Source of the DNA: Phaeosaccion multiseriatum
Taxonomy: Eukaryota; Protista; Ochrophyta, other classes
Assembly (NCBI GenBank): GCA_965112735.1
Contig: OZ218957.1
Span: 3,607,293 to 3,671,292 of the forward strand
Direction of reading: 5' to 3'
DNA: 64,000 nt
Shown piece after piece: positions 1-61,080 of the stretch. Position 1 is the stretch's first letter, and the number at the start of each line of letters is the position of its first letter. The notes under the pieces are model-generated. The model worked only from the letters and a program-made list of their open reading frames with translations, was not told the DNA's origin and searched no databases. A program made the translations under genes and the position numbers.

Positions 1-3000
1 ACGATGGAGGGCTCGGAGGAGGACCCCGGGGTGAACGTCAGAGCCCTCACCAGCCTCTTCAAAGGAGCGCAGGAAGATCAGGACGACGTGGTGAGGGAGG
101 GGGGAGGGGAGAGGCGTATGGGCAGAGAGAGGGAGACAAAGGGAGAGAGAGAGATGCCATGCGAGGGCGACGCTTCCCCCCATCTGTCGTACTGCCGCTG
201 TACTGCCGCCGCACTCAGTGCCACTCACTCCCCCCCCTCTCCCTCCTTCTCCAATGACGTATTGAAAGGAGTACTCATTCACCATCAGCATGATGGAGAT
301 CTACAATGAAACCGTCAGGGACCTGCTGGTGCCCGGGGGGACCACCGGTGAGTGGGGGTCGTGCTTGGGTCCCCAGCGAGGGCATGCTTAGGCCTGGGCT
401 GAGGGAGAGGAGCTCCGGACCGTAAAGGGTGGTGCTGGAAGCAGATGGGTCGGAAAAGAAGCAGCCCGATATTGACGTGTTGACAAGAAGCTTGGCTTGA
501 TATTGACGTGTTGACAAGAAGCTTGGCTTGATATTGACGTGTTGACAAGAAGCTTGGCTTGATATTGACGTGTTGACAAGAAGCTTGGCTTGATATTGAC
601 GTGTTGACGACGTGTTGACAAGAAGCTTGGCTTGATATTGACGTGTTGACAAGAAGCTTGGCTTGATATTGACGTGTTGACAAGAAGCTTGGCTTGATAT
701 TGACGTGTTGACAAGAAGCTTGGCTGATATTGACGTGTTGACAAGAAGCTTGGCTTGATATTGACGTGTTGACAAGAAGCTTGGCTTGATATTGACGTGT
801 TGACAAGAAGCTTGGCTTGATATTGACGTGTTGACAAGAAGCTTTGGCTTGAGGCTTGATGTCACTCTCCAGAACCATCATTGCAATTTGTATCATGGTG
901 GGGCTCTACCCCCCCCCCCCCTCGACTCCCCGGGGCTCAATCGATGGCTCCTGACCCCTCCCTCCCTCCCCCTTCTTGCGTGTGTGTGCAGGAGAAAAGT
1001 TGGACATTCGGCAGTCACCCACGGGCACCGTCGTACCCGGCCTGACGGAGGTGAGTCTAACCGCTTCGAGACTTTGACGTCGACCTTGACGTCGACTTTG
1101 ACGTCGGCTTTGACGTCGACTTTGACGTCGACTTTGGCATCGACTTTGACCTCGATTTTTGGAGTCGGGCTTGTTACGGGGACGAGGGAGACTGGATGTG
1201 TACCGCAGGTGTCTTCTCTGCTTGGCACTGTCTGCATCAATCTTGTTTGTGGCCCTCTGCTGCTGTTTTTGTTTCTGCCGACTCTGGACTCTTCCCTTCC
1301 CTTGCCATGGAGGATGGACCACCTTCGCTTCCCTCCTGCATGATGTTGTGTTGTGTTGTGTTGCCGAGCCCCGACCCTCTCCGGCCTCCAATATCGATCC
1401 CAATATCGATCCCAATATCGACATGCACACACTGTGGACGTGCCTCCACTCAGGTATCTGTGAGCAGCATCGAGGAGGTGAACGTGCAGCTGGAGCAGGG
1501 CCGCTCGGGAAGGGCCGTGGGCAGCCACGACATGAACGAGCACAGCAGCAGGAGCCACATGATCTTCAGGGTCATGGTCACAGGGGTCAACAGGTCGGTA
1601 CTAAGTCAATGGGTGGGGTGGGGGAGCTGTGTGTGTGGTTGGCCTGTGGCAACGCTTCCTCCCTTCCCCCCTATGCGATGATCCCCGCAGCGCCATCAGG
1701 TGCCATCGGGTTGATGGTTGGCACCGCCTCACCTCTGCTCTACCCCGCTCCGCGCCCTGCCCACCAACACGCTTCTATACCCTCAGACCGCAACAACCAC
1801 CAGCATCCGCTCCACACTCTAACTAATCCATATGCCTCAAACATGCCCCTATGCTTCTACTGTGCCCATATGCCTACACAGACACAACAACACCAACATC
1901 CGCTCCAAGCTGCACCTCATCGATCTCGCAGGTAAATATTTCATCATCGCGGGCAGGCATATGGGCAGGCACATGAATATGAGCAGGCATATGGGCAAGC
2001 GTAAGGATAGGAATATGGGTCGGCAGCACAGCACAGCACTCGTCCTTGCCCTGGGGGTGGAGCTGAAGCTTCAGCACCCCATGCAACTGTCCACCCAACA
2101 CTCCATCCATTGCCATCCCCTACGCCCCCCCCCCCTCAGGCAGCGAGCGTATCTCCAAGACCGATGCCACGGGAGACAGGCTCAAGGAGGCGCAGAACAT
2201 CAACCGCTCCCTCTCGGCCCTCGGTGACGTCATCGCCGCCCTCTCTTCCTCCAAGAAGGGCGGGCACGTGCCCTACAGAAACAGCAAGTAAGTGCAGTAA
2301 GGCAGTGGAAGGAAGACAGATCACACATGACACACACACTCGATCGGAGGGAGGGGAATCCTCTTCGCCTCTCTCCCCCTCTCTCCTCTTCCCCTCTCCC
2401 CCTTCTCTCCCACTCTCCCCCTCTTCCTTTCTCTGCCCCCCCCCGTCCCCCTGTGTCCCCCCTCTGCCCCCCTACCCAAGCCTCTCTCGAGCTTGCCTCC
2501 CTATTGACTGGCTGCCCCCCTCCCTCTGTGACTGCTCCGCCCCCCCCTCCCTTGCCCAGACTGACGTTTCTGCTGCAGGACTCCCTGTCGGGCAACAGCA
2601 AGGTCATGATGTTCGTCAACGCATCCCCCGCGGAGTACAACGTCGGAGGTACGCAACACGCACCCACGCACGCACCCACGCACGCGCCCACGCACGCCCA
2701 TCTGGCCTCCTGCTCTCCTCCTCCTCCTCCTCCTCTCCCTTGTCCTTCTCCTTCCTAACTGCACTGCTGCCGTACCACCAACTGCTGCACTGCAGAGACG
2801 GTGTGCTCTCTGACGTTTGCGTCGCGCTGCCGAGCCGTGGAGCTTGGAGGCGCAAAGAAGAACGTCGACAGCCTCGAAGTAGGCAAGGTCAGTTGGAGGC
2901 TTATGGGGAGGGAGGTGGAATGGGCTTGGGTGGAGGTGTATGAGCAGGGCCCCGCGGGTATCTTAAGTCATGGGGTGGCAGGGGGTGAGGCCTCAGGGCG

Positions 3001-46413: not shown

Positions 46414-49400
46414 GGCCCATCTGGCCTGATATCGACACGGGAGGGTTGAACTGTGCTGTCTCTGGGCCGATGGGGATAAAATGGTCCCGCCATGGTCGCA
46501 ATGAGTGTGCTGAGCGTCTCTGGTGTGCCCGGTACGGTGTTCTGTGTGGTTGGACAGGCCCATCTGTGGGCCCCGGGGGGTCATCTGGCGCCTGATTTCG
46601 ACACGGGAGGGTTGAACAATGGCTTCCATGGGCCGGTGGGGTTGAAATGGTCCCACCATGGTCGCAATGAGTCTGTGCGGGGTCTATGGCGCGCTCGGCG
46701 GGGTTGAACATGGGCCTCTGTGGGGTTGAACAGGCCCATCTGTGGCCCCCGGTGGGCAATCTGGGCCTGATCTCGGCACGGGAGGGTTGAACAATCGCTT
46801 CCATAGGCCGGTGGGGTTGAAATGGTCCCACCATGGTCGCAATGAGTCTGCGCGGCGTCTATGGGGTGCTCGGCGGGGTTGAACATGGGCCTCTGTGGGG
46901 TTGAACAGGCCCATCTGTGGGCTACCCCGGTGGGCAATCTGGGCCTGATTTCGGTACGGGAGGGTTGAACAATCGCTTCCATGGGCCGGTGGGGTCGAAA
47001 TGGTCCCACCATGGTCGCAATGAGTCTGCTTTTCATCTATGGTGTGCTCGGCGGGGTTGAACATGGGCCTCTGTGGGGTTGAACAGGCCCATCTGTGGCC
47101 CCCGGTGGGCAATCTGGGCCTGATTTCGGCACGGGAGGGTTGAACAATGCCTTCTGTGGGCCGGAGGGGTTGAAACGTTCCCAGCATGATTGGAATGGGT
47201 CTGCGATGCGTCTATGGTGCGCTCGGCGGGGTTGAACATGGGCCTCTGTGGGGTTGAACAGGCCCATCTGTGGCCCCCGGTGGGCAATCTGGGCCTGATT
47301 TCGGCACGGGAGGGTTGAACAATGCCTTCTGTGGGCCGGAGGGGTTGAAACGTTCCCACCATGATTGGAATGGGGCTGCGATGCGTCTATGGTGCGCTCG
47401 GCGGGGTTGAACATGGGCCTCTGTGGGGTTGAACAGGCCCATCTGCTGCCCCCCGTGGGCAATCTGGGCCTGATTTCGACACGGGAGGGTTAAACAATCG
47501 CTTCCATGGACCGGTGGGGTTGAAGTGGTCCACCATGGTCGAAATGAGTCTGCGATGCGTCTATGGCGTGCTCGGCGGGGTTGAACATGGGCCTCTGTGG
47601 GGTTGAACAGGCCCATCTGTGGACGCCGGTGGGCAATCTGGGCCTGATTTCGGCACGGGAGGGTTGAACAATCGCTTCCATGGGCCGGTGGGGTTGAAAT
47701 GGTCCCACCATGGTCGCAATGGGTCTGCGCGTCGTCTACGGTGTGCTCGGCGGGGTTGAACATGGGCCTCTGTGGGGTTGAACAGGCCCATCTGTGGCCC
47801 CCGGTGGGCAATCTGGGCCTGATTTCGACACGGCAGGGTTGAACAATGCCTTGTGTGGGCCGGTGGGGTTAAAATGGTCCCACTATGGTCGCAATGAGTC
47901 TGCGCGGCGTCTATGGTGCGCTCGGCGGGGTTGAACATGGGCCTCTGTGGGGTTGAACAGGCCCATCTGTGGAGCCGCCCCCGGTGGGCAATCTGGGCCT
48001 GATTTCGGCACGGCAGGGTTGAACAATGCCTTGTGTGGGCCGGTGGGGTTGAAATGGTCCCACCATGGTCGCAATGAGTCAGCGCAGCGTCTATGGTGCG
48101 CTCGGCGGGGTTGAACATGGGCCTCTGTGGGGTTGAACAGGCCCATCTGGGGAGCCGCGCCCGGTGGGCAATCTGGGCCTGATTTCGGCACGGGAGGGTT
48201 GAACAATGCCTTCCATGGGCCGGTGGGGTTGAAGTGGTCCCACCATGGTCGCCATGAGTCTGCGATACGTCTATGGTGCGCTCGGCGGGGTTGAACATGG
48301 GCCTCTGTGGGGTTGAACAGGCCCATCTGTGGCCCCCGGTGGGCAATCTGGGCCTGGTTTCGGCACGGGAGGGTTGAACAATGCCTTGTGTGGGCCGGTG
48401 GGGTTGAAGTGGTCCCACCATGGTCGCAATGAGTCTGCGATACGTCTATGGTGTGATCGGCGGGGTTGAACATGGGCCTCTGTGGGGTTGAACAGGCCCA
48501 TCTGTGGCCACCGGTGGGCAATCTGGGCCTGATTTCGGCACGGGAGGGTTGAACAATGCCTTCCATGGGCCGGTGGGGTTGAAGTGGTCCCACCATGGTC
48601 GCAATGAGTCTGCGATACGTCTATGGTGCGCTCGGCGGGGTTGAACATGGGCCTCTGTGGGGTTGAACAGGCCCATCTGTGGCCCCCGGTGGGCAATCTG
48701 GGCCTGGTTTCGGCACGGGAGGGTTGAACAATGCCTTGTGTGGGCCGGTGGGGTTGAAGCGGTCCCACCATGGTCGCAATGAGTCTGCGATACGTCTATG
48801 GTGTGCTCGGCGGGGTTGAACATGGGCCTCTGTGGGGTTGAACAGGCCCATCTGTGGCCACCGGTGGGCAATCTGGGCCTGATTTCGGCACGGGAGGGTT
48901 GAACAATCGCTTCCATGGCCGGTGGGGTTGAAGTGGTCCCACCATGGTCGCAATGAGTCTGCGATACGTCTATGGTGTGCTCGGCGGCGTTGAACATGGG
49001 CCTCTGTGGGGTTGAACAGGCCCATCTGTGGCCCCCGGTGGGCAATCTGGGCCTGATTTCGGCACGGCAGGGTTGAACAATGCCTTCCATGGGCCGATGG
49101 GGTTGAAGCGGTCCCACCATGGTCGCAATGAGTCTGCGCGGCGTCTATGGTGCGCTCGGCGGGGTTGAACATGGGCCTCTGTGGGGTTGAACAGGCCCAT
49201 CTGTGGACCCCGGTGGGCAACCTGGGCCTGATTTCGGCACGGGAGGGTTGAACAATCGCTTCCATGGGCCGGTGGGGTTGAAGCGGTCCCACCATGGTCG
49301 CAATGAGTCTACGCGGGGTCTATGGCGCGCTCTGCGGGGTTGAACATGGGCCTCTGTGGGGTTGAACAGGCCCATCTGTGGACCCCGGTGGGCAATCTGG

Positions 49401-50497
49401 GCCTGATTTCGGCACGGGAGGGTTGAACAATCGCTTCCATGGGCCGGTGGGGTTGAAGCGGTCCCACCATGGTCGCAATGAGTCTGCGCGGCGTCTATGG
49501 TGCGCTCGGCGGGGTTGAACATGGGCCTCTGTGGGGTTGAACAGGCCCATCTGTGGACCCCGGTGGGCAACCTGGGCCTGATTTCGGCACGGGAGGGTTG
49601 AACAATCGCTTCCATGGGCCGGTGGGGTTGAAGCGGTCCCACCATGGTCGCAATGAGTCTACGCGGGGTCTATGGCGCGCTCTGCGGGGTTGAACATGGG
49701 CCTCTGTGGGGTTGAACAGGCCCATCTGTGGACCCCGGTGGGCAATCTGGGCCTGATTTCGGCACGGGAGGGTTGAACAATCGCTTCCATGGGCCGATGG
49801 GGTTGAAAAGGTCCCACCATGGTCGCAATGAGTCTGCGCGGCGTCTATGGCGTGCTCGGCGGGGTTGAACATGGGCCTCTGTGGGGTTGAACAGGCCCAT
49901 CTGCGGCCCCCCGTGGGCAATCTGGGCCTGATTTCGACACGGAAGGGTTGAACAATCGCTTCCATGGACCGGTGGGGTTGAAGTGGTCCCACCATGGTCG
50001 CAACGAGTCTACGAGGGGTCTATGGTGCGCTCGGCGGGGTTGAACATGGGCCTCTGTGGGGTTGAACAGGCCCATCTGTGGAGCCGCCCCCGGTGGGCAA
50101 TCTGGGCCTGATTTCGGCACGGGAGGGTTGAACAATGCCTTCCATGGGCCGGTGGGGTTGAAGTGGTCCCACCACGGTCGCAATGAGTCTGCGATACGTC
50201 TATGGTGCGCTCGGCGGGGTTGAACATCGGCCTCTGTGGGGTTGAACAGGCCCATCTGCGGCCCCCCGTGGGCAATCTGGGCCTGATTTCGACACGGGAG
50301 GGTTGAACAACCGCTTCTATGGGCCGGTGGGGATGAATGGGACCCACCACGGCCGCAATGAGTCTGCGCGGCGTCTATGGTGTGCTCGGCGGGGTTGAAC
50401 ATGGGCCTCTGTGGGGTTGAACAGGCCCATCTGTGGGCTCCCCCGGTGGGCAATCTGGGCCTGATTTCGACACGGAAGGGTTGAACAACCGCTTCTA
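46414..50497. repeat. Subtelomeric satellite, ~175-bp unit, ~23 copies
   Basis: Period of 175 bp (some units 174-180). Four GGGTTGAA submotifs per unit. Degenerate at the proximal edge. Confidence 0.95.
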
Positions 50498-50498
50498 T

Positions 50499-51927
50499 GA
50501 GAACCACTTCGTCCGAGGCCTCAGGACTCGAGAACCACTTGAGAACCACTTCGTCCGAGGCCTCAGGACGCGAGAACCAGTGGAGAACCACTTCGTCCGA
50601 GGCCTCAGGACTCGAGAACCACTTGAGAACCACTTCGTCCGAGGCCTCAGGACTCGAGAACCAGTGGAGAACCACTTCGTCCGAGGCCTCAGGACTCGAG
50701 AACCAGTTGAGAACCACTTCGTCCGAGGCCTCAGGACGCGAGAACCAGTGGAGAACCACTTCTCCGCGGCCTCAGGACGCGAGAACCAGTGGAGAACCAC
50801 TTCGTCCGAGGCCTCAGGACTCGAGAACCACTTGAGAACCACTTCGTCCGCGGCCTCAGGACGCGAGAACCAGTGGAGAACCACTTCGTCCGAGGCCTCA
50901 GGACCCGAGAACCACTTGAGAACCACTTCGTCCGAGGCCTCAGGACTCGAGAACCACTTGAGAACCACTTCGTCCGAGGCCTCAGGACGCGAGAACCAGT
51001 GGAGAACCACTTCGTCCGAGGCCTCAGGACTCGAGAACCACTTGAGAACCACTTCGTCCGAGGCCTCAGGACTCGAGAACCAGTGGAGAACCACTTCGTC
51101 CGAGGCCTCAGGACTCGAGAACCAGTGGAGAACCACTTCGTCCGAAGCCTCAGGACTCGAGAACCACTTGAGAACCACTTCGTCCGAGGCCTCAGGACTC
51201 GAGAACCAGTGGAGAACCACTTCGTCCGAGGCCTCAGGACTCGAGAACCAGTGGAGAACCACTTCGTCCGCGGCCTCAGGACTCGAGAACCACTTGAGAA
51301 CCACTTCGTCCGAGGCCTCAGGACTCGAGAACCAGTGGAGAACCACTTCGTCCGAGGCCTCAGGACTCGAGAACCAGTTGAAAACCACTTCGGCCGAGGC
51401 CTCAGGACGCGAGAACCAGTGGAGAACCACTTCTCCGCGGCCTCAGGACTCGAGAACCAGTGGAGAACCACTTCGTCCGAGGCCTCAGGACTCGAGAACC
51501 AGTGGAGAACCACTTCGTCCGAGGCCTCAGGACTCGAGAACCACTTGAGGACCACTTCGTCCGAGGCCTCAGGACTCGAGAACCAGTGGAGAACCACTTC
51601 GTCCGAGGCCTCAGGACTCGAGAACCACTTGAGAACCACTTCGTCCGAGGCCTCAGGACTCGAGAACCAGTGGAGAACCACTTCGTCCGAGGCCTCAGGA
51701 CTCGAGAACCAGTGGAGAACCACTTCGTCCGAGGCCTCAGGACTCGAGAACCAGTGGAGAACCACTTCGTCCGAAGCCTCAGGACTCGAGAACCACTTGA
51801 GAAGCACTTCGTCCGAGGCCTCAGGACTCGAGAACCAGTGGAGAACCACTTCGTCCGAGGCCTCAGGACGCGAGAACCAGTGGAGAACCACTTCGTCCGA
51901 GGCCTCAGGACTCGAGAACCAGTGGAG
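50499..51927. repeat. 42-bp telomere-associated satellite, proximal block (~34 units)
   Basis: Unit GAGAACCACTTCGTCCGAGGCCTCAGGACTCGAGAACCA(CTT/GTG). Confidence 0.97.
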
Positions 51928-53689
51928 TGTAAAACGACGTACGCACGACCGACATGCGCTGTCGCCTACAGATAGGATAGAACTAGACACACGGACAAGG
52001 TAACAGCAACCCCAAAGCCAGCCTAGCAGCCAGCCTTGCCTCTATTAACTTATCGCATGCTAGTCCTAAACGACCACCTTCGCACATAGGATAGTGAGAG
52101 CCACGCCACCCGTTCTCACTGTATCTGCCTGGGCCTGGGCCATTGACTTATGGCCCATCTCATCTGAGGCCTTCCAACATCCCCAATGCCTATCCCGGGG
52201 CCTTCCAACATCCCCAATAGCTATCCGCCACTTCCAACATCCCCTTGACAAGACTGTTGCGTGTCCCCACGCAACACAAGCGGATTCGCCTACTGAAGCT
52301 CGACTGTCGCACAAGCCTCCATGCTGCTTCCAAAAAAAGAAAACGGATGAGCATTATGCAACACTCACCCAGATGTGTGCGACCGCTCCTCCCACACACA
52401 CCCCCTGTATTGATGAGAAAATCCCACGACTCAAACTCACCCACACAGGCTCACGGATGAGAAGATCCCACGACTCAAACTCACCCGCGCCATATCTTTC
52501 TCCACTCCTACTCGCCACCAGCGTTGCCAAAGCCTCGTTGCGCACCACTAATGCTGACTGCTAAAGTGTTTACTGGTGTGCCTACAAGGCACCCAGACAG
52601 TCCCTAAAGCAGCCTTGCGAGTATCCTTCTCTGTCTCCCACCAAGCTCCGTGCAACAACAACATCCGTGCTGCTGCCGCACTCGAAAGCCGTGCCCGCTG
52701 TAAGACACCGCTCCCGGCAACTCTCTCTCTCCACTGCCCACCAACCTCCAGCATCCATTTCCGTGCAACAACAACATCCGTGCTGCTGTCACACTCGAAA
52801 GCCGTGCCCGCTGTAAGACACCGCTCCCGGCAATTCTCTCTCTCCCCTGCCCACCAAACTCCAGCATCCATTTCCGTCCAACAACAACATCCGTGCTGCT
52901 GCCACACTCGAAAGCTGTGCCCGCTGTAGACACCACTCCCGGCAATTCTCTCTCTCCACTGCCCACCAACCTCCAGCATCCATTTCCGTGCAACAACAAC
53001 ATCCGTGCTGCTGCCACACTCGAAAGCTGTGCCCGCTGTAAGACACCGCTCCCGGCAATTCTCTCTCTCCACTGCCCACCAACCTCCAGCATCCATTTCC
53101 GTGCAACAACAACATCCGTGCTGCTGCCACACTCGAAAGCTGTGCCCGCTGTAGACACCACTCCCGGCAATTCTCTCTCTCCACTGCCCACCAACCTTCA
53201 GCATCCATTTCCGTGCAACAACAACATCCGTGCTGCTGCCACACTCGAAAGCTGTGCCCGCTGTAGACACCACTCCCGGCAATTCTCTCTCCACTCCCGC
53301 CTCTCCGTGCAACAACAACTCCGCTGCTGTCGCACGTCGTACGGCACTGCGTATGTGCCGCACGGTGCTCCCCTAACACGCCTCTTCCTTCCCTGCCTAA
53401 GCCTCTTGGCTAAGTGCTGCTTTCGGGCCTTTGGGGTTGTAAAACGACGTACGCACGACCGACATGCGCTGTCGCCTACAGATAGGATAGAACTAGACAC
53501 ACGGACAAGGTAACAGCAACCCCAAAGCCAGCCTAGCAGCCAGCCTTGCCTCTATTAACTTATCGCATGCTAGTCCTAAACGACCACCTTCGCACATAGG
53601 ATAGTGAGAGCCACGCCACCCGTTCTCACTGTATCTGCCTGGGCCTGGGCCATTGACTTATGGCCCATCTCATCTGAGGCCTTCCAACA
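51928..53689 (-). mobile_element. Non-autonomous LTR retrotransposon (TRIM-like), 1762 bp, two identical 252-bp LTRs
   Basis: LTRs 51928-52179 and 53438-53689, both TG...CA. 4-bp TSD GGAG (51924-51927, 53690-53693). On the minus strand a short GGGGA tract abuts the 3' LTR (TGTTGGAAG). No gag/pol motifs seen. Confidence 0.92.
52650..53330. repeat. ~113-bp tandem repeat (~6 copies) inside the LTR element
   Basis: CAACAACAACATCCGTGCTGCTGCCACACTCGAAAGC... recurs every 112-113 bp. Confidence 0.9.
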
Positions 53690-56600
53690 GGAGAACCACT
53701 TCGTCCGAGGCCTCAGGACTCGAGAACCACTTGAGAACCACTTCGTCCGAGGCCTCAGGACTCGAGAACCACTTGAGAACCACTTCGTCCGCGGCCTCAG
53801 GACTCGAGAACCAGTGGAGAACCACTTCGTCCGAGGCCTCAGGACTCGAGAACCAGTGGAGAATGAGAACCACTTCGTCCGAGGCCTCAGGACTCGAGAA
53901 CCAGTGGAGAACCACTTCGTCCGAGGCCTCAGGACTCGAGAACCACTTGAGAACCACTTCGTCCGAGGCCTCAGGACTCGAGAACCAGTGGAGAACCACT
54001 TCGTCCGAGGCCTCAGGACTCGAGAACCACTTGAGAACCACTTCGTCCGAGGCCTCAGGACTCGAGAGCCAGTGGAGAACCACTTCGTCCGAGGCCTCAG
54101 GACTCGAGAACCACTTGAGAACCACTTCGTCCGAGGCCTCAGGACTCGAGAACCAGTGGAGAACCACTTCGTCCGAGGCCTCAGAACGCGAGAACCAGTG
54201 GAGAACCACTTCGTCCGAGGCCTCAGGACTCGAGAACCACTTGAGAACCACTTCGTCCGAGGCCTCAGGACTCGAGAACCACTTGAGAACCACTTCGCCC
54301 GAGGCCTCAGGACTCGAGAACCACTTGAGAACCACTTCGTCCGCGGCCTCAGGACGCGAGAACCAGTGGAGAACCACTTCGTCCGCGGCCTCAGGACTCG
54401 AGAACCACTGGAGAACCACTTCGTCCGAGGCCTCAGGACTCGAGAACCACCTGAGAACCACTTCGTCCGAGGCCTCAGGACTCGAGAACCACTTGAGAAC
54501 CACTTCGTCCGAGGCCTCAGGACTCGAGAACCACTTGAGAACCACTTCGTCCGCGGCCTCAGGACTCGAGAACCACTGGAGAACCACTTCGTCCGAGGCC
54601 TCAGGACTCGAGAACCACTTGAGAACCACTTCGTCCGAGGCCTCAGGACTCGAGAACCAGTGGAGAACCACTTCGTCCGAGGCCTCAGGACTCGAGAACC
54701 ACTTGAGAACCACTTCGTCCGAGGCCTCAGGACTCGAGAACCAGTGGAGAACCACTTCGTCCGAGGCCTCAGGACTCGAGAACCAGTGGAGAACCACTTC
54801 GTCCGCGGCCTCAGGACTCGAGAACCACTTGAGAACCACTTCGTCCGAGGCCTCAGGACTCGAGAACCAGTGGAGAACCACTTCGTCCGAGGCCTCAGGA
54901 CTCGAGAACCACTTGAGAACCACTTCGTCCGAGGCCTCAGAACGCGAGAACCAGTGGAGAACCACTTCGTCCGAGGCCTCCGGACTCGAGAACCACTTGA
55001 GAACCACTTCGTCCGAGGCCTCAGGACTCGAGAACCAGTTGAGAACCACTTCGTCCGAGGCCTCAGGACTCGAGAACCACTTGAGAACCACTTCGTCCGA
55101 GGCCTCAGGACTCGAGAACCAGTGGAGAACCACTTCGTCCGAGGCCTCAGGACGCGAGAACCAGTGGAGAACCACTTCGCCCGAGGCCTCAGGACTCGAG
55201 AACCACTTGAGAACCACTTCGTCCGAGGCCTCAGGACTCGAGAACCACTTGAGAACCACTTCGTCCGAGGCCTCAGGACTCGAGAACCAGAGGAGAACCA
55301 CTTCGTCCGAGGCCTCAGGACTCGAGAACCACTTGAGAACCACTTCGTCCGAGGCCTCAGGACGCGAGAACCACTTGAGAACCACTTCGTCCGAGGCCTC
55401 AGGACTCGAGAACCAGTGGAGAACCACTTCGTCCGAGGCCTCAGGACGCGAGAACCACTTGAGAACCACTTCGTCCGAGGCCTCAGGACTCGAGAACCAC
55501 TTGAGAACCACTTCGTCCGAGGCCTCAGGACTCGAGAACCAGTGGAGAACCTCTTCGTCTGAGGCCTCAGGACGCGAGAACCAGTGGAGAACCACTTCGT
55601 CCGAGGCCTCAGGACTCGAGAACCACTTGAGAACCACTTCGTCCGAGGCCTCAGGACGCGAGAACCACTTCAGAACCACTTCGTCCGAGGCCTCAGGACT
55701 CGAGAACCAGTGGAGAACCACTTCGTCCGAGGCCTCAGAACGCGAGAACCAGTGGAGAACCACTTCGTCCGAGGCCTCAGGACTCGAGAACCACTTGAGA
55801 ACCACTTCGTCCGAGGCCTCAGGACTCGAGAACCACTTGAGAACCACTTCGTCCGCGGCCTCAGGACTCGAGAACCACTTGAGAACCACTTCGTCCGAGG
55901 CCTCAGGACTCGAGAACCACTTGAGAACCACTTCGTCCGCGGCCTCAGGACGCGAGAACCAGTGGAGAACCACTTCGTCCGAGGCCTCAGGACTCGAGAA
56001 CCACTTGAGAACCACTTCGTCCGAGGCCTTAGGACTCGAGAACCACTTGAGAACCACTTCGTCCGAGGCCTCAGGACTCGAGAACCAGTGGAGAACCACT
56101 TCGTCCGAGGCCTCAGGACTCGAGAACCAGTTGAGAACCACTTCGTCCGAGGCCTCAGGACTCGAGAACCACTTGAGAACCACTTCGTCCGAGGCCTCAG
56201 GACGCGAGAACCACTTGAGAACCACTTCGTCCGAGGCCTCAGGACTCGAGAACCAGTGGAGAACCACTTCGTCCGAGGCCTCAGGACTCGAGAACCACTT
56301 GAGAACCACTTCGTCCGCGGCCTCAGGACTCGAGAACCACTTGAGAACCACTTCGTCCGAGGCCTCAGGACTCGAGAACCACTTGAGAACCACTTCGTCC
56401 GCGGCCTCAGGACGCGAGAACCAGTGGAGAACCACTTCGTCCGAGGCCTCAGGACTCGAGAACCACTTGAGAACCACTTCGTCCGAGGCCTTAGGACTCG
56501 AGAACCACTTGAGAACCACTTCGTCCGAGGCCTCAGGACTCGAGAACCAGTGGAGAACCACTTCGTCCGAGGCCTCAGGACTCGAGAACCAGTTGAGAAC

Positions 56601-59600
56601 CACTTCGTCCGAGGCCTCAGGACTCGAGAACCAGTTGAGAACCACTTCGTCCGAGGCCTCAGGACTCGAGAACCAGTGGAGAACCACTTCGTCCGAGGCC
56701 TCAGGACTCGAGAACCACTGGAGAACCACTTCGTCCGCGGCCTCAGGACTCGAGAACCACTTGAGAACCACTTTGTCCGAGGCCTCAGGACGCGAGAACC
56801 ACTTGAGAACCACTTCGTCCGAGGCCTCAGGACTCGAGAACCAGTGGAGAACCACTTCGTCCGAGGCCTCAGGACTCGAGAACCAGTGGAGAACCACTTC
56901 GTCCGAGGCCTCAGGACTCGAGAACCACTTGAGAACCACTTCGTCCGCGGCCTCAGGAATCGAGAACCACTGGAGAACCACTTCGTCCGAGGCCTCAGGA
57001 CTCGAGAACCAGTGGAGAACCACTTCGTCCGCGGCCTCAGGACTCGAGAACCACTTGAGAACCACTTCGTCCGAGGCCTCAGGACTCGAGAACCAGTGGA
57101 GAACCACTTCGTCCGAGGCCTCAGGACGCGAGAACCACTTGAGAACCACTTCGTCCGAGGCCTCAGGACTCGAGAACCAGTGGAGAACCACTTCGTCCGA
57201 GGCCTCAGGACGCGAGAACCAGTGGAGAACCACTTCGCCCGAGGCCTCAGGACTCGAGAACCACTTGAGAACCACTTCGTCCGAGGCCTCAGGACTCGAG
57301 AACCACTTGAGAACCACTTCGTCCGAGGCCTCAGGACTCGAGAACCAGAGGAGAACCACTTCGTCCGAGGCCTCAGGACTCGAGAACCACTTGAGAACCA
57401 CTTCGTCCGAGGCCTCAGGACGCGAGAACCACTTGAGAACCACTTCGTCCGAGGCCTCAGGACTCGAGAACCAGTGGAGAACCACTTCGTCCGAGGCCTC
57501 AGGACTCGAGAACCAGTTGAGAACCACTTCGTCCGAGGCCTCAGGACTCGAGAACCACTTGAGAACCACTTCGTCCGAGGCCTCGGGACTCGAGAACCAG
57601 TGGAGAACCTCTTCGTCCGAGGCCTCAGGACGCGAGAACCAGTGGAGAACCACTTCGTCCGAGGCCTCAGGACTCGAGAACCACTTGAGAACCACTTCGT
57701 CCGAGGCCTCAGGACGCGAGAACCACTTCAGAACCACTTCGTCCGAGGCCTCAGGACTCGAGAACCAGTGGAGAACCACTTCGTCCGAGGCCTCAGAACG
57801 CGAGAACCAGTGGAGAACCACTTCGTCCGAGGCCTCAGGACTCGAGAACCACTTGAGAACCACTTCGTCCGAGGCCTCAGGACTCGAGAACCACTTGAGA
57901 ACCACTTCGTCCGCGGCCTCAGGACTCGAGAACCACTTGAGAACCACTTCGTCCGAGGCCTCAGGACGCGAGAACCACTTGAGAACCACTTCGTCCGAGG
58001 CCTCAGGACTCGAGAACCAGTGGAGAACCACTTCGTCCGAGGCCTCAGGACTCGAGAACCAGTGGAGAACCACTTCGTCCGAGGCCTCAGGACTCGAGAA
58101 CCAGTGGAGAACCACTTCGTCCGCGGCCTCAGGACTCGAGAACCAGTTGAGAATCACTTCGTCCGAGGCCTCAGGACTCGAGAACCAGTGGAGAACCACT
58201 TCGTCCGAGGCCTCAGGACTCGAGAACCAGTGGAGAACCACTTCGTCCGCGGCCTCAGGACTCGAGAACCACTTGAGAACCACTTCGTCCGAGGCCTCAG
58301 GACTCGAGAACCACTTGAGAACCACTTCGTCCGAGGCCTCAGGACTCGAGAACCAGTGGAGAACCACTTCGTCCGAGGCCTCAGGACTCGAGAACCAGTG
58401 GAGAACCACTTCGTCCGCGGCCTCAGGACCCGAGAACCACTTGAGAACCACTTCGTCCGAGGCCTCAGGACTCGAGAACCAGTGGAGAACCACTTCGTCC
58501 GAGGCCTCAGGACCCGAGAACCACTTGAGAACCACTTCGTCCGAGGCCTCAGGACTCGAGAACCACTTGAGAACCACTTCGTCCGAGGCCTCAGGACGCG
58601 AGAACCACTTGAGAACCACTTCGTCCGAGGCCTCAGGACTCGAGAACCAGTGGAGAACCACTTCGTCCGAGGCCTCAGGACTCGAGAGCCAGTGGAGAAC
58701 CACTTCGTCCGAGGCCTCAGGACTCGAGAACCACTTGAGAACCACTTCGTCCGAGGCCTCAGGACGCGAGAACCACTTGAGAACCACTTCGTCCGAGGCC
58801 TCAGGACGCGAGAACCAGTGGAGAACCACTTCGTCCGAGGCCTCGGGACTCGAGAACCAGTGGAGAACCACTTCGTCCGAGGCCTCAGGACTCGAGAACC
58901 AGTGGAGAACCACTTCGTCCGAGGCCTCAGGACTCGAGAACCACTTGAGAACCACTTCGTCCGCGGCCTCAGGACTCGAGAACCACTTGAGAACACTTCG
59001 TCCGAGGCCTCAGGACTCGAGAACCAGTGGAGAACCACTTCGTCCGAGGCCTCAGGACTCGAGAACCAGTGGAGAACCACTTCGTCCGCGGCCTCAGGAC
59101 CCGAGAACCACTTGAGAACCACTTCGTCAGAGGCCTCAGGACTCGAGAACCAGTGGAGAACCACTTCGTCCGAGGCCTCAGGACCCGAGAACCACTTGAG
59201 AACCACTTCGGCCGAGGCCTCAGGACTCGAGAACCACTTGAGAACCACTTCGTCCGAGGCCTCAGGACGCGAAAACCACTTGAGAACCACTTCGTCCGAG
59301 GCCTCAGGACTCGAGAACCAGTGGAGAACCACTTCGTCCGAGGCCTCAGGACTCGAGAGCCAGTGGAGAACCACTTCGTCCGAGGCCTCAGGACCCGAGA
59401 ACCACTTGAGAACCACTTCGTCCGAGGCCTCAGGACTCGAGAACCACTTGAGAACCACTTCGTCCGAGGCCTCAGGACTCGAGAACCAGTGGAGAACCAC
59501 TTCGTCCGAGGCCTCCGGACTCGAGAACCACTTGAGAACCACTTCGTCCGAGGCCTCAGGACGCGAGAACCACTTGAGAACCACTTCGCCCGAGGCCTCA

Positions 59601-61080
59601 GGACTCGAGAACCACTTGAGAACCACTTCGTCCGAGGCCTCAGGACTCGAGAACCACTTGAGAACCACTTCGTCCGAGGCCTCAGGACGCGAGAACCACT
59701 TGAGAACCACTTCGTCCGAGGCCTCAGGACGCGAGAACCAGTGGAGAACCACTTCGTCCGAGGCCTCGGGACTCGAGAACCAGTGGAGAACCACTTCGTC
59801 CGAGGCCTCAGGACTCGAGAACCAGTGGAGAACCACTTCGTCCGAGGCCTCAGGACTCGAGAACCACTTGAGAACCACTTCGTCCGCGGCCTCAGGACTC
59901 GAGAACCACTTGAGAACCACTTCGTCCGAGGCCTCAGGACTCGAGAACCACTGGAGAACCACTTCGTCCGCGGCCTCAGGACTCGAGAACCAGTGGAGAA
60001 CCACTTCGTCCGAGGCCTCAGGACGCGAGAACCACTTGAGAACCACTTCGGCCGAGGCCTCAGGACTCGAGAACCAGTGGAGAACCACTTCGTCCGAGGC
60101 CTCAGGACTCGAGAACCACTTGAGAACCACTTCGTCCGAGGCCTCAGGACTCGAGAACCACTTGAGAACAACTTCGTCCGCGGCCTCAGGACTCGAGAAC
60201 CACTTGAGAACCACTTCGTCCGAGGCCTCAGGACTCGAGAACCAGTGGAGAACCACTTCGTCCGAGGCCTCAGGACTCGAGAACCACTTGAGAACCACTT
60301 CGTCCGAGGCCTCAGGACGCGAGAACCACTTGAGAACCACTTCGTCCGAGGCCTCAGGACTCGAGAACCAGTGGAGAACCACTTCGTCCGAGGCCTCAGG
60401 ACTCGAGAACCACTTGAGAACCACTTCGTCCGAGGCCTCAGGACTCGAGAACCAGTGGAGAACCACTTCGTCCGAGGCCTCAGGACCCGAGAACCACTTG
60501 AGAACCACTTCGTCCGAGGCCTCAGGACTCGAGAACCAGTGGAGAACCACTTCGTCCGAGGCCTCAGGACCCGAGAACCACTTGAGAACCACTTCGTCCG
60601 AGGCCTCAGGACTCGAGAACCACTTGAGAACCACTTCGTCCGAGGCCTCAGGACGCGAGAACCACTTGAGAACCACTTCGTCCGAGGCCTCAGGACTCGA
60701 GAAGCAGTGGAGAACCACTTCGTCCGAGGCCTCAGGACTCGAGAGCCAGTGGAGAACCACTTCGTCCGAGGCCTCAGGACCCGAGAACCACTTGAGAACC
60801 ACTTCGTCCGAGGCCTCAGGACTCGAGAACCACTCTCGAACCACTTCGTCCGAGGCCTCAGGACTCGAGAACCAGTGGAGAACCACTTCGTCCGAGGCCT
60901 CAGGACTCGAGAACCAGTGGAGAACCACTTCGTCCGAGGCCTCAGGACGCGAGAACCAGTGGAGAACCACTTCGTCCGAGGCCTCAGGACTCGAGAACCA
61001 CTTGAGAACCACTTCGTCCGAGGCCTCAGGACTCGAGAACCACTTGAGAACCACTTCGTCCGCGGCCTCAGGACTCGAGA
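53690..61080. repeat. 42-bp telomere-associated satellite, distal block (~176 units)
   Basis: Same unit as 50499-51927; directly abuts the telomere. Confidence 0.97.

What the first reader, a model, noticed from the sequence alone, without database searches (positions are those of the whole stretch)
51928..53689. Miniature LTR retroelement with an apparent tRNA-independent (Tf1-type) self-priming site
Seen: on the minus strand the 5' LTR is followed not by a TGG-type tRNA PBS but by CA|ACCCCAAAG (+ strand 53429-53439). This is perfectly complementary over 11 nt to CTTTGGGGTTG inside the same LTR (+ 53517-53527). An AT-rich TAAGTTAATA lies ~25-35 nt upstream of that LTR motif, where a TATA box would put the transcript start. 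Known: Schizosaccharomyces pombe Tf1 and related Gypsy elements prime reverse transcription with the first ~11 nt of their own RNA annealed to the PBS. Inference: this is a non-coding TRIM-like parasite of a self-priming Gypsy element in an alga. Identical LTRs and an intact TSD imply a very recent insertion.
Basis: partly seen in the sequence, partly recalled or inferred. Interest (0 to 1): 0.8.

Follow-up and report, generated by a model that had tools for sequence, protein, structure and literature searches.

The report
Self-priming mini retrotransposon in an alga
A young 1.76-kb non-coding jumping gene beside a chromosome end of a photosynthetic protist seems to start its own DNA copying with a piece of its own RNA instead of a host tRNA, and the genome holds inserted hairpin-shaped by-products that look like misfires of that trick.

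Summary
Window 51928-53689 is a non-coding LTR element whose sense strand is the minus strand. It has identical 252-bp LTRs and a 4-bp GGAG duplication, and lies in a subtelomeric satellite. The 11 nt that start at the last two bases of the 5' LTR are a perfect complement of LTR positions 163-173.

Self-priming is supported, with corrections.
- The motif pair is kept in about 35 full copies of two related mini families.
- The autonomous partner I identified is a 13.5-kb Ty3/gypsy element with an exonuclease in Pol. It shares the polypurine tract and LTR ends but has a different site, matched by a different LTR motif at the same aligned columns.
- A second 6-bp helix 7 nt upstream also covaries. 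The primer strand therefore spans LTR 150-173, and the RNA start may lie near + 53543 rather than 53527. The start site was not measurable.
- Thirteen LTRs are joined, exactly at this complementarity, to an inverted LTR. Four of five units examined carry 4-bp duplications, so I read them as integrated aberrant cDNAs.

It is not shown to belong to the Tf1/sushi lineage, because no chromodomain was found, and it is too long for a strict TRIM. Other readers of this scan noted self-priming and fold-back LTR units elsewhere in this genome.

The parts
51928..53689 (-). Whole non-autonomous LTR element (family T1), 1762 bp
   Evidence: Identical LTRs and a TSD. At least 13 further full copies with the same LTR-to-site junction.
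53438..53689 (-). 5' LTR (252 bp, TG..CA)
   Evidence: Orientation is fixed by the polypurine tract and by the partner's ORF direction.
51928..52179 (-). 3' LTR, 100% identical to the 5' LTR
51924..51927 (.). Target-site duplication GGAG, left copy; the right copy is at 53690-53693
   Evidence: The satellite unit is restored when the element and one GGAG are removed.
53429..53439 (-). Primer-binding site, helix 1 acceptor strand (11 nt, overlaps the last CA of the LTR)
53517..53527 (-). LTR positions 163-173: self-primer strand of helix 1
   Evidence: Invariant in about 97 of 100 listed LTRs.
53535..53540 (-). LTR positions 150-155: upstream strand of helix 2
   Evidence: Covariation across three families. 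Present in the minimum-energy folds.
53416..53421 (-). Downstream strand of helix 2, starting 8 nt past the 11-nt site (7 unpaired bases between)
   Evidence: A in 13 T1 copies and G in 20 T2 copies at the covarying base.
52180..52196 (-). Polypurine tract, 17 nt, identical to that of autonomous family A
52197..52247 (-). Two extra copies of the unit 'LTR start + purine tract'; fold-back units end at these sites
52647..53291 (-). 113-bp internal tandem repeat, 5.7 copies; copy number differs between elements, and family T2 has a homologous repeat
53553..53562 (-). AT-rich TATA-like motif in the LTR
   Evidence: Conserved in T2, and family A has TATAAGG at a similar distance from helix 1.

Best explanation
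This is a young, non-coding LTR retroelement (family T1). It is copied by the proteins of a 13.5-kb Ty3/gypsy element (family A), and starts minus-strand DNA synthesis by self-priming.

Proposed mechanism:
- A stretch of its own leader RNA, LTR positions 150-173, folds onto the region just after the 5' LTR.
- The fold uses a perfect 11-bp helix that overlaps the terminal CA, plus a 6-bp helix.
- RNase H is inferred to cut after position 173. The freed 3' end is then extended through U5.
- I favour an RNA start near LTR 147 (+ about 53543), so that the first ~27 nt form the primer. A start at 163, an exact Tf1 copy, is the alternative.

Because plus-strand strong-stop DNA ends in a copy of the primer, its 3' end also matches the LTR of any plus-strand DNA. 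Mispairing there gives LTR-to-inverted-LTR cDNAs, which integrase inserts.

Shown: the anatomy, copy numbers, covariation, the partner's shared ends, and the fold-back units with duplications.
Inferred: the RNA start, the RNase H cut, and the route to the fold-backs.
For: 1. No TGG-type site. The 11-nt complement beats chance: 9 of 20000 shuffles for T1 and 42 of 20000 for the 9-nt match in family A.
2. The junction is kept in 13-14 T1 and 20 T2 copies. The LTR motif is invariant in about 97 of 100 LTRs, although U5 differs in length and sequence.
3. Family A has the same polypurine tract, 41 of 44 identical first LTR bases, the same TTTTACA end and 4-bp duplications. Its site and its LTR motif nevertheless differ from T1 in a matched way.
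4. On alignment A2, 6 of 17 pair columns change on both sides and 91% of cells pair, against 27-59% when the partner columns are slid.
5. Minimum-energy folds of RNA starting at about LTR 146 contain both helices in T1, T2 and A.
6. Thirteen exact LTR-site-inverted-LTR junctions stand beside about 35 normal ones, and there is one in family A at its own motif.
7. Fold-back units end at purine-tract cleavage sites and carry the duplications CCAA, CAGG, ATCC and TCAT. Some join LTRs of different families.
8. Four metatranscriptome runs hold LTR plus site plus internal sequence, but not the flanking satellite.
Against: - The RNA 5' end was not measured. The RNA data are contigs and cannot show starts.
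- The indirect hints on the start disagree. The TATA-like motifs lie about 30 nt from position 163 in T1 and A. Helix 2 and two 27-nt arms point to about 147.
- Covariation rests on only two or three lineages of one genome.
- The tRNA comparison was indirect. I made pattern searches for tRNA T-arm context, not a full nuclear tRNA set.
- No full copy shows its site converted to the primer's perfect complement, which a 27-nt primer would predict unless the tail is trimmed.
- The closest database relative examined (L073, about 35% identical Pol) has a TGG-type site.
Confidence: 0.7

Rival explanations
1. An exact Tf1 copy. Transcription starts at LTR 163 (+ 53527), and only the first 11 nt pair and serve as primer. 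Helix 2 would then be formed by the 3' LTR copy, for example to circularise the RNA for strand transfer, or would play no part in priming.
For: AT-rich TATA-like motifs lie 26-35 nt (T1) and about 29 nt (A) upstream of the first paired base. Tf1 uses exactly 11 nt (PMC7175516). All roughly 35 full copies keep the genomic version of the site region, as an 11-nt primer predicts.
Against: Helix 2 covaries in register in three families, and its LTR strand would be absent from the 5' end of such an RNA. An RNA for family A starting at the motif does not fold into helix 1, but does when started 16-17 nt upstream. Two truncated arms both end 27 nt from the cut site.
Confidence: 0.25
2. The site is bound by a host small RNA, such as a tRNA fragment, and the LTR copy of the motif is incidental.
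For: Half-tRNA priming is known in Ty1/copia lineages (PMC6317226). My tRNA test was incomplete.
Against: T1/T2 and A have different sites, each matched by its own LTR at homologous columns. The motif was not found 3' of a T-arm. It was found upstream of one three times against one in the control, and none of the three is tRNA-like. There is no TGG. Fold-back junctions show that a DNA 3' end within the site can pair with the LTR motif.
Confidence: 0.06
3. The pairing is real but serves RNA dimerisation, packaging or strand transfer. Priming uses something else.
For: Long-range leader pairings with such roles exist in retroviruses and Ty1 (my own knowledge, not tested here).
Against: The helix sits exactly where the primer must sit, overlapping the terminal CA, and no other candidate site follows the LTR. 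The fold-back arms show that a DNA 3' end lay within the 11-nt site, because the switch from internal to LTR-complement sequence falls there.
Confidence: 0.12
4. The complement is a relic of an ancestral fold-back, or chance, and the fold-back loci are ordinary genomic inverted duplications.
For: This genome has many palindromic rearrangements (earlier notes). Template-switch products are common around these LTRs.
Against: The shuffle tests. Single-base compensatory changes with an unconserved loop between the helices. Duplications of 4 bp around whole fold-back units, and arm ends at purine-tract sites.
Confidence: 0.04

Closest known systems
Tf1/Tf2 of Schizosaccharomyces pombe and other self-priming Ty3/gypsy elements (Tj1, Maggy, Skippy, sushi; plant Tcn1 clade)
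   Same: There is no tRNA site. The site directly after the 5' LTR is complementary to a stretch of the same LTR, and the perfect helix is 11 bp as in Tf1 (PMC7175516, PMC4600332, PMC6317226).
   Different: The host is a photosynthetic, stramenopile-like protist. The partner lacks a chromodomain and carries a DEDDy exonuclease in Pol. The duplex is bipartite, with a covarying 6-bp helix upstream of the 11 nt, so the primer may be about 27 nt. Integrated fold-back by-products are abundant. I found no report of these in the papers searched.
TRIM / small non-autonomous LTR retrotransposons (e.g. plant TRIMs, bivalve and ant TRIMs)
   Same: Short LTRs, no coding capacity, a polypurine tract, duplications, tandem arrays that share an LTR, and dependence on an autonomous element with matching ends.
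   Different: At 1762 bp it is longer than the usual limit of under 1 kb. The site is not tRNA-type and is not shared with the partner. The duplication is 4 bp.
TAR lineage of plant Ty1/copia (Houba, Osr-1), predicted self-primers
   Same: Predicted self-priming outside fungi and vertebrates (PMC6317226).
   Different: A different superfamily. There is no evidence there of a second helix or of fold-back insertions.
Self-priming of strong-stop DNA in retroviruses (fold-back of minus-strand strong-stop DNA at TAR in HIV-1)
   Same: A strong-stop DNA end pairs with an internal complement and is extended (my own knowledge, not checked in a paper here).
   Different: Here it concerns plus-strand strong-stop DNA, follows from the self-primer design, and the products are found integrated in the genome.

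Membership tests
Self-priming LTR retroelements (mechanistic class) | No tRNA-type primer site (TGG... matching a tRNA 3' end) after the 5' LTR | tested here: met
   The sequence after the LTR starts ACCCCAAAGG. No tRNA context was found around the complement beyond chance. The tRNA set was not exhaustive.
Self-priming LTR retroelements (mechanistic class) | The site adjacent to the 5' LTR is complementary to a stretch inside the same LTR | tested here: met
   11 of 11 nt, with 9 of 20000 shuffles reaching this. Kept in about 35 copies.
Self-priming LTR retroelements (mechanistic class) | The complementary stretch lies at the 5' end of the transcript | tested here: inconclusive
   RNA contigs cover the region but cannot show starts. 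TATA spacing fits LTR 163, while helix 2 and the 27-nt arms fit about 147.
Self-priming LTR retroelements (mechanistic class) | RNase H cut in the RNA duplex frees the primer | not testable with these tools
   This needs biochemistry. The partner does encode RT and RNase H.
Self-priming LTR retroelements (mechanistic class) | Site and leader change together between lineages | tested here: met
   6 compensatory columns in 17 pairs across T1, T2 and A.
Tf1/sushi lineage (chromoviruses) | Chromodomain at the integrase C-terminus | tested here: not met
   No PF00385 in the 1959-aa Pol, nor in its last 380 aa at E up to 0.1.
Tf1/sushi lineage (chromoviruses) | RT/IN phylogeny groups with Tf1/sushi | not tested
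The nearest database Pols are at most 38% identical and unnamed.
TRIM | Total length under about 1 kb with LTRs of 100-250 bp | tested here: not met
   1762 bp with LTRs of 252 bp. Other copies measure 1.5-1.76 kb.
TRIM | No coding capacity; polypurine tract; target duplication | tested here: met
Ty3/gypsy (the partner, family A) | Pol order RT - RNase H - integrase, with LTRs and a duplication | tested here: met
   Pfam order RVT_1, RT_RNaseH, (DNA_pol_A_exo1), Integrase_H2C2, rve. LTRs of 200 bp, and duplications ATGC, GCAG and ACGC.

The most novel reading that the evidence does not exclude
The self-primer is the first ~27 nt of the RNA, so plus-strand strong-stop DNA ends in a tail that matches its own LTR perfectly but the true acceptor only in part. 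The DEDDy 3'-5' exonuclease built into the partner's Pol trims that tail so that the second strand transfer can proceed. The integrated LTR-to-inverted-LTR units are the products formed when trimming loses to fold-back or to pairing of two strong-stop DNAs. That would be a new enzymatic step in reverse transcription, and a built-in source of hairpin loci aimed at the element's own promoter.
Probability: 0.15. Interest if true: 0.85.

Novelty: new variant of a known kind. Interest (0 to 1): 0.62.

Why it matters
Self-priming has been shown by experiment only in fission-yeast elements, and has been inferred by sequence in fungi, vertebrates and some plants. Here it appears in a distant algal lineage, in both an autonomous element and its small parasites. 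Each has its own matched primer and site, which is what a cis-acting primer predicts and a shared host tRNA does not.

The inserted fold-back units are natural fossils of reverse-transcription intermediates. They show that a DNA 3' end lay within the 11-nt site and that different families shared a particle. This gives testable predictions about the RNA start and about the role of the unusual exonuclease in the partner's Pol.

Tried and rejected
- RNA evidence for the start site. The only RNA runs are kept as contigs. They show the element, but not the satellite flank, in four metatranscriptomes, and no starts.
- Full tRNA comparison. ARAGORN on all held DNA (359 kb) gave one doubtful hit. I fell back on T-arm context patterns.
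- A third independent lineage. None was found among the held loci.
- Relatives in other organisms. Pol hits are at most 38% identical and none has the exonuclease. One fetched relative has a TGG-type site. Another locus (L071) had no clear LTRs.
- I first read a 900-bp stretch after the partner's ORF as its LTR. It is a 200-bp LTR plus flank plus a truncated T2 element.
- The plus strand as the sense strand was rejected, because the purine tract and the partner's ORF fix the minus strand.

Full report
**Observation**

The two LTRs (51928-52179 and 53438-53689) are 252/252 identical and run TG..CA. GGAG flanks both ends, and removing the element and one GGAG restores the unit of a 42-bp satellite. 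That satellite runs from 50499 to 61081 and abuts a TTAGGG telomere at 61081-64000.

On the minus strand the 5' LTR is followed by CA|ACCCCAAAG. Together with the terminal CA, this is an 11-nt perfect complement of LTR positions 163-173 (+ 53517-53527). With shuffled LTRs such a match arose in 9 of 20000 trials.

The interior has only repeat-derived open frames with no family above threshold. The element has no Rfam match.

**Family and orientation**

The genome is 67 Mb in 22 contigs, with rbcL on small contigs. It holds more than 100 such LTRs.

Every 3' LTR is preceded by the same purine tract ending GGCATTGGGGA. Every 5' LTR of this family (T1) is followed by the same site. There are 13-14 such junctions. 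A second mini family (T2) has LTRs about 80% alike, a U5 that is 19 nt shorter and a homologous 113-115-bp internal repeat. It has 20 junctions with the same 11 nt.

**Partner**

At C3:4756878-4770747 a T1 copy is nested in a 13.7-kb element. That element's 1959-aa ORF has RT, RNase H, a DEDDy 3'-5' exonuclease and integrase.

Its 200-bp LTR shares 41 of its first 44 bases and the end TTTTACA with T1, and its purine tract is identical over 17 nt. Its copies have 4-bp duplications, as T1 does. I take this family (A) as the source of the proteins. Pfam finds no chromodomain. The nearest Pols in the large protein database are at most 38% identical and lack the exonuclease.

**Covariation**

Family A is followed by ACCCGTTTTG rather than the T1 site. 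At the same alignment columns where T1 has its 11-nt motif, the A LTR reads CAAACGGGTTC. Nine of the eleven pairs are therefore kept through four double changes.

A second helix lies 7 nt upstream in the LTR. It joins positions 150-155 (+ 53535-53540) to six bases that start 8 nt past the site (+ 53416-53421). It is in register in all three families. One column reads T:A in T1, C:G in T2 and A:T in A, and another reads T:A or A:T. All 13 T1 and 20 T2 junctions agree with this.

In total, 6 of 17 pair columns change on both sides and 91% of cells pair, against 27-59% for slid partners. Only two or three lineages underlie this. The loop between the helices is not complementary, so wholesale copying of the LTR cannot explain the single-base compensations.

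**Fold-back units**

In 13 places an LTR runs through the 11 nt straight into the reverse complement of an LTR, from position 173 back towards position 1. Family A has one such junction at its own motif. Five units were read in full:
- L036 5964-6388 is an LTR plus an inverted LTR 173..1, with duplication CCAA.
- L035 and L034 have arms that end at the extra 'LTR start + purine tract' units, with duplications CAGG and ATCC.
- L048 joins a T2 LTR to an inverted LTR of a third variant, with duplication TCAT.
- An older unit in L037 has no duplication.
- Separately, L038 8198-8610 joins a T2 LTR to an inverted T1 LTR.

The evidence consists of duplications around whole units, arm ends at purine-tract cleavage sites, and mixed-family arms. 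Together these indicate products made during reverse transcription and inserted by integrase, not later genomic rearrangements.

My reading is an inference. Plus-strand strong-stop DNA ends in a copy of the primer, so its 3' end can pair with the LTR motif of the same or a second strong-stop DNA. It is then extended to that strand's 5' end. Two such strands give a duplex with an LTR start at both ends.

**Where does the RNA start?**

This could not be measured. Four metatranscriptome runs hold LTR, site and interior as contigs and nothing of the satellite flank, but contigs show no starts. The indirect hints conflict:
- The AT-rich motifs lie about 30 nt upstream of position 163 in T1 and A.
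- Helix 2 needs LTR 150-155 in the same molecule as the site.
- RNAs started near LTR 146 fold into both helices in all three families, whereas an A RNA started at the motif does not.
- Two truncated fold-back arms, one T2-like and one of A, are both 27 nt long and start at adjacent alignment columns.

I favour a start near LTR 147 (+ about 53543), but hold the exact Tf1 form at about one in four.

**tRNA test**

There is no TGG. The 11-nt motif is never found 3' of a tRNA T-arm. It is found 5' of one three times against one in the control, and none of the three is tRNA-like. The nuclear tRNA set itself could not be fetched, so this test is partial. The different, self-matched sites of T1 and A are the stronger argument against a host primer.

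**Comparison with what is known**

Self-priming was shown for Tf1: the first 11 bases pair with the site and RNase H cuts between bases 11 and 12 (PMC7175516). It is inferred for Tj1 and other fungal and vertebrate elements (PMC4600332). In plants it is predicted for the Tcn1 and TAR lineages, and for 12% of surveyed elements overall (PMC6317226).

Among the top-ranked hits of a search combining self-priming with stramenopile, diatom, alga or oomycete, none mentions self-priming. I also found no description of integrated fold-back products.

The element works like Tf1. Membership of the Tf1/sushi lineage is not shown, and one defining feature, the chromodomain, is absent. It is TRIM-like rather than a strict TRIM.

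**Earlier notes of this scan**

Other readers flagged self-priming sites (s1-352762, s1-352830) and fold-back LTR units (s1-342217, s1-357270, s1-326290, s1-360344) on other pieces of this genome. They also flagged the exonuclease Pol (s1-352606, s1-345947). I had reached the fold-back units and the partner from the sequence before reading the self-priming and fold-back notes; the exonuclease notes were already listed.

**Verdict**

Self-priming is supported at about 0.7. The details of the start site, the lineage and the TRIM label are corrected. This is a new variant of a known kind.

Noticed in passing
window 46541-64000: Chromosome end: a 175-bp satellite (46541-50499), a 42-bp satellite (50499-61081) and about 486 TTAGGG repeats (61081-64000). 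The same 42-bp satellite flanks T1 or family A LTRs on other contigs (L029, L048, L062), so subtelomeres collect these elements.
   Followed up: partly
L038:93-5969 (C3:4764593-4770469): The partner's Pol carries a DNA_pol_A_exo1 (DEDDy) domain between RNase H and integrase. No database Pol found here shares it. Its possible link to trimming of strong-stop DNA tails is speculation.
   Followed up: partly
L045 rc of 1150-2150 (C16, about 506275-506800): An internally deleted family A derivative: LTR, its site, 18 further nt of inverted LTR (27 nt with the site), then the last ~60 nt of the interior, the purine tract and an LTR. This is a possible route by which mini elements arise.
   Followed up: partly
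L012 112-561; L031 7100-7790; L032 8452-9045: Zig-zag LTR rearrangements with several strand switches. One uses a different 14-nt inverted match inside U5.
   Followed up: no
G000 C14:2.30-2.76 Mb: A dense cluster of T1, T2, family A and fold-back copies on one contig stretch. It may be a centromere-like or otherwise TE-rich region.
   Followed up: no
G000 C17-C22: Small contigs rich in tRNA genes, repeated at about 56-kb spacing on C17. rbcL is on C18 and C21. These are organelle genomes assembled more than once.
   Followed up: no
window 52647-53291 and L038 7000-7765: The 113-115-bp internal tandem repeat is conserved between T1 and T2 while copy number varies. RNA contig depth is highest there. 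Its function, perhaps packaging, is unknown.
   Followed up: no
G000 C5:1433692-1433788: A diverged LTR whose leader reads CGTGGAAGTTC instead of the usual motif. Its site could not be read. It would be a good further test of covariation.
   Followed up: no
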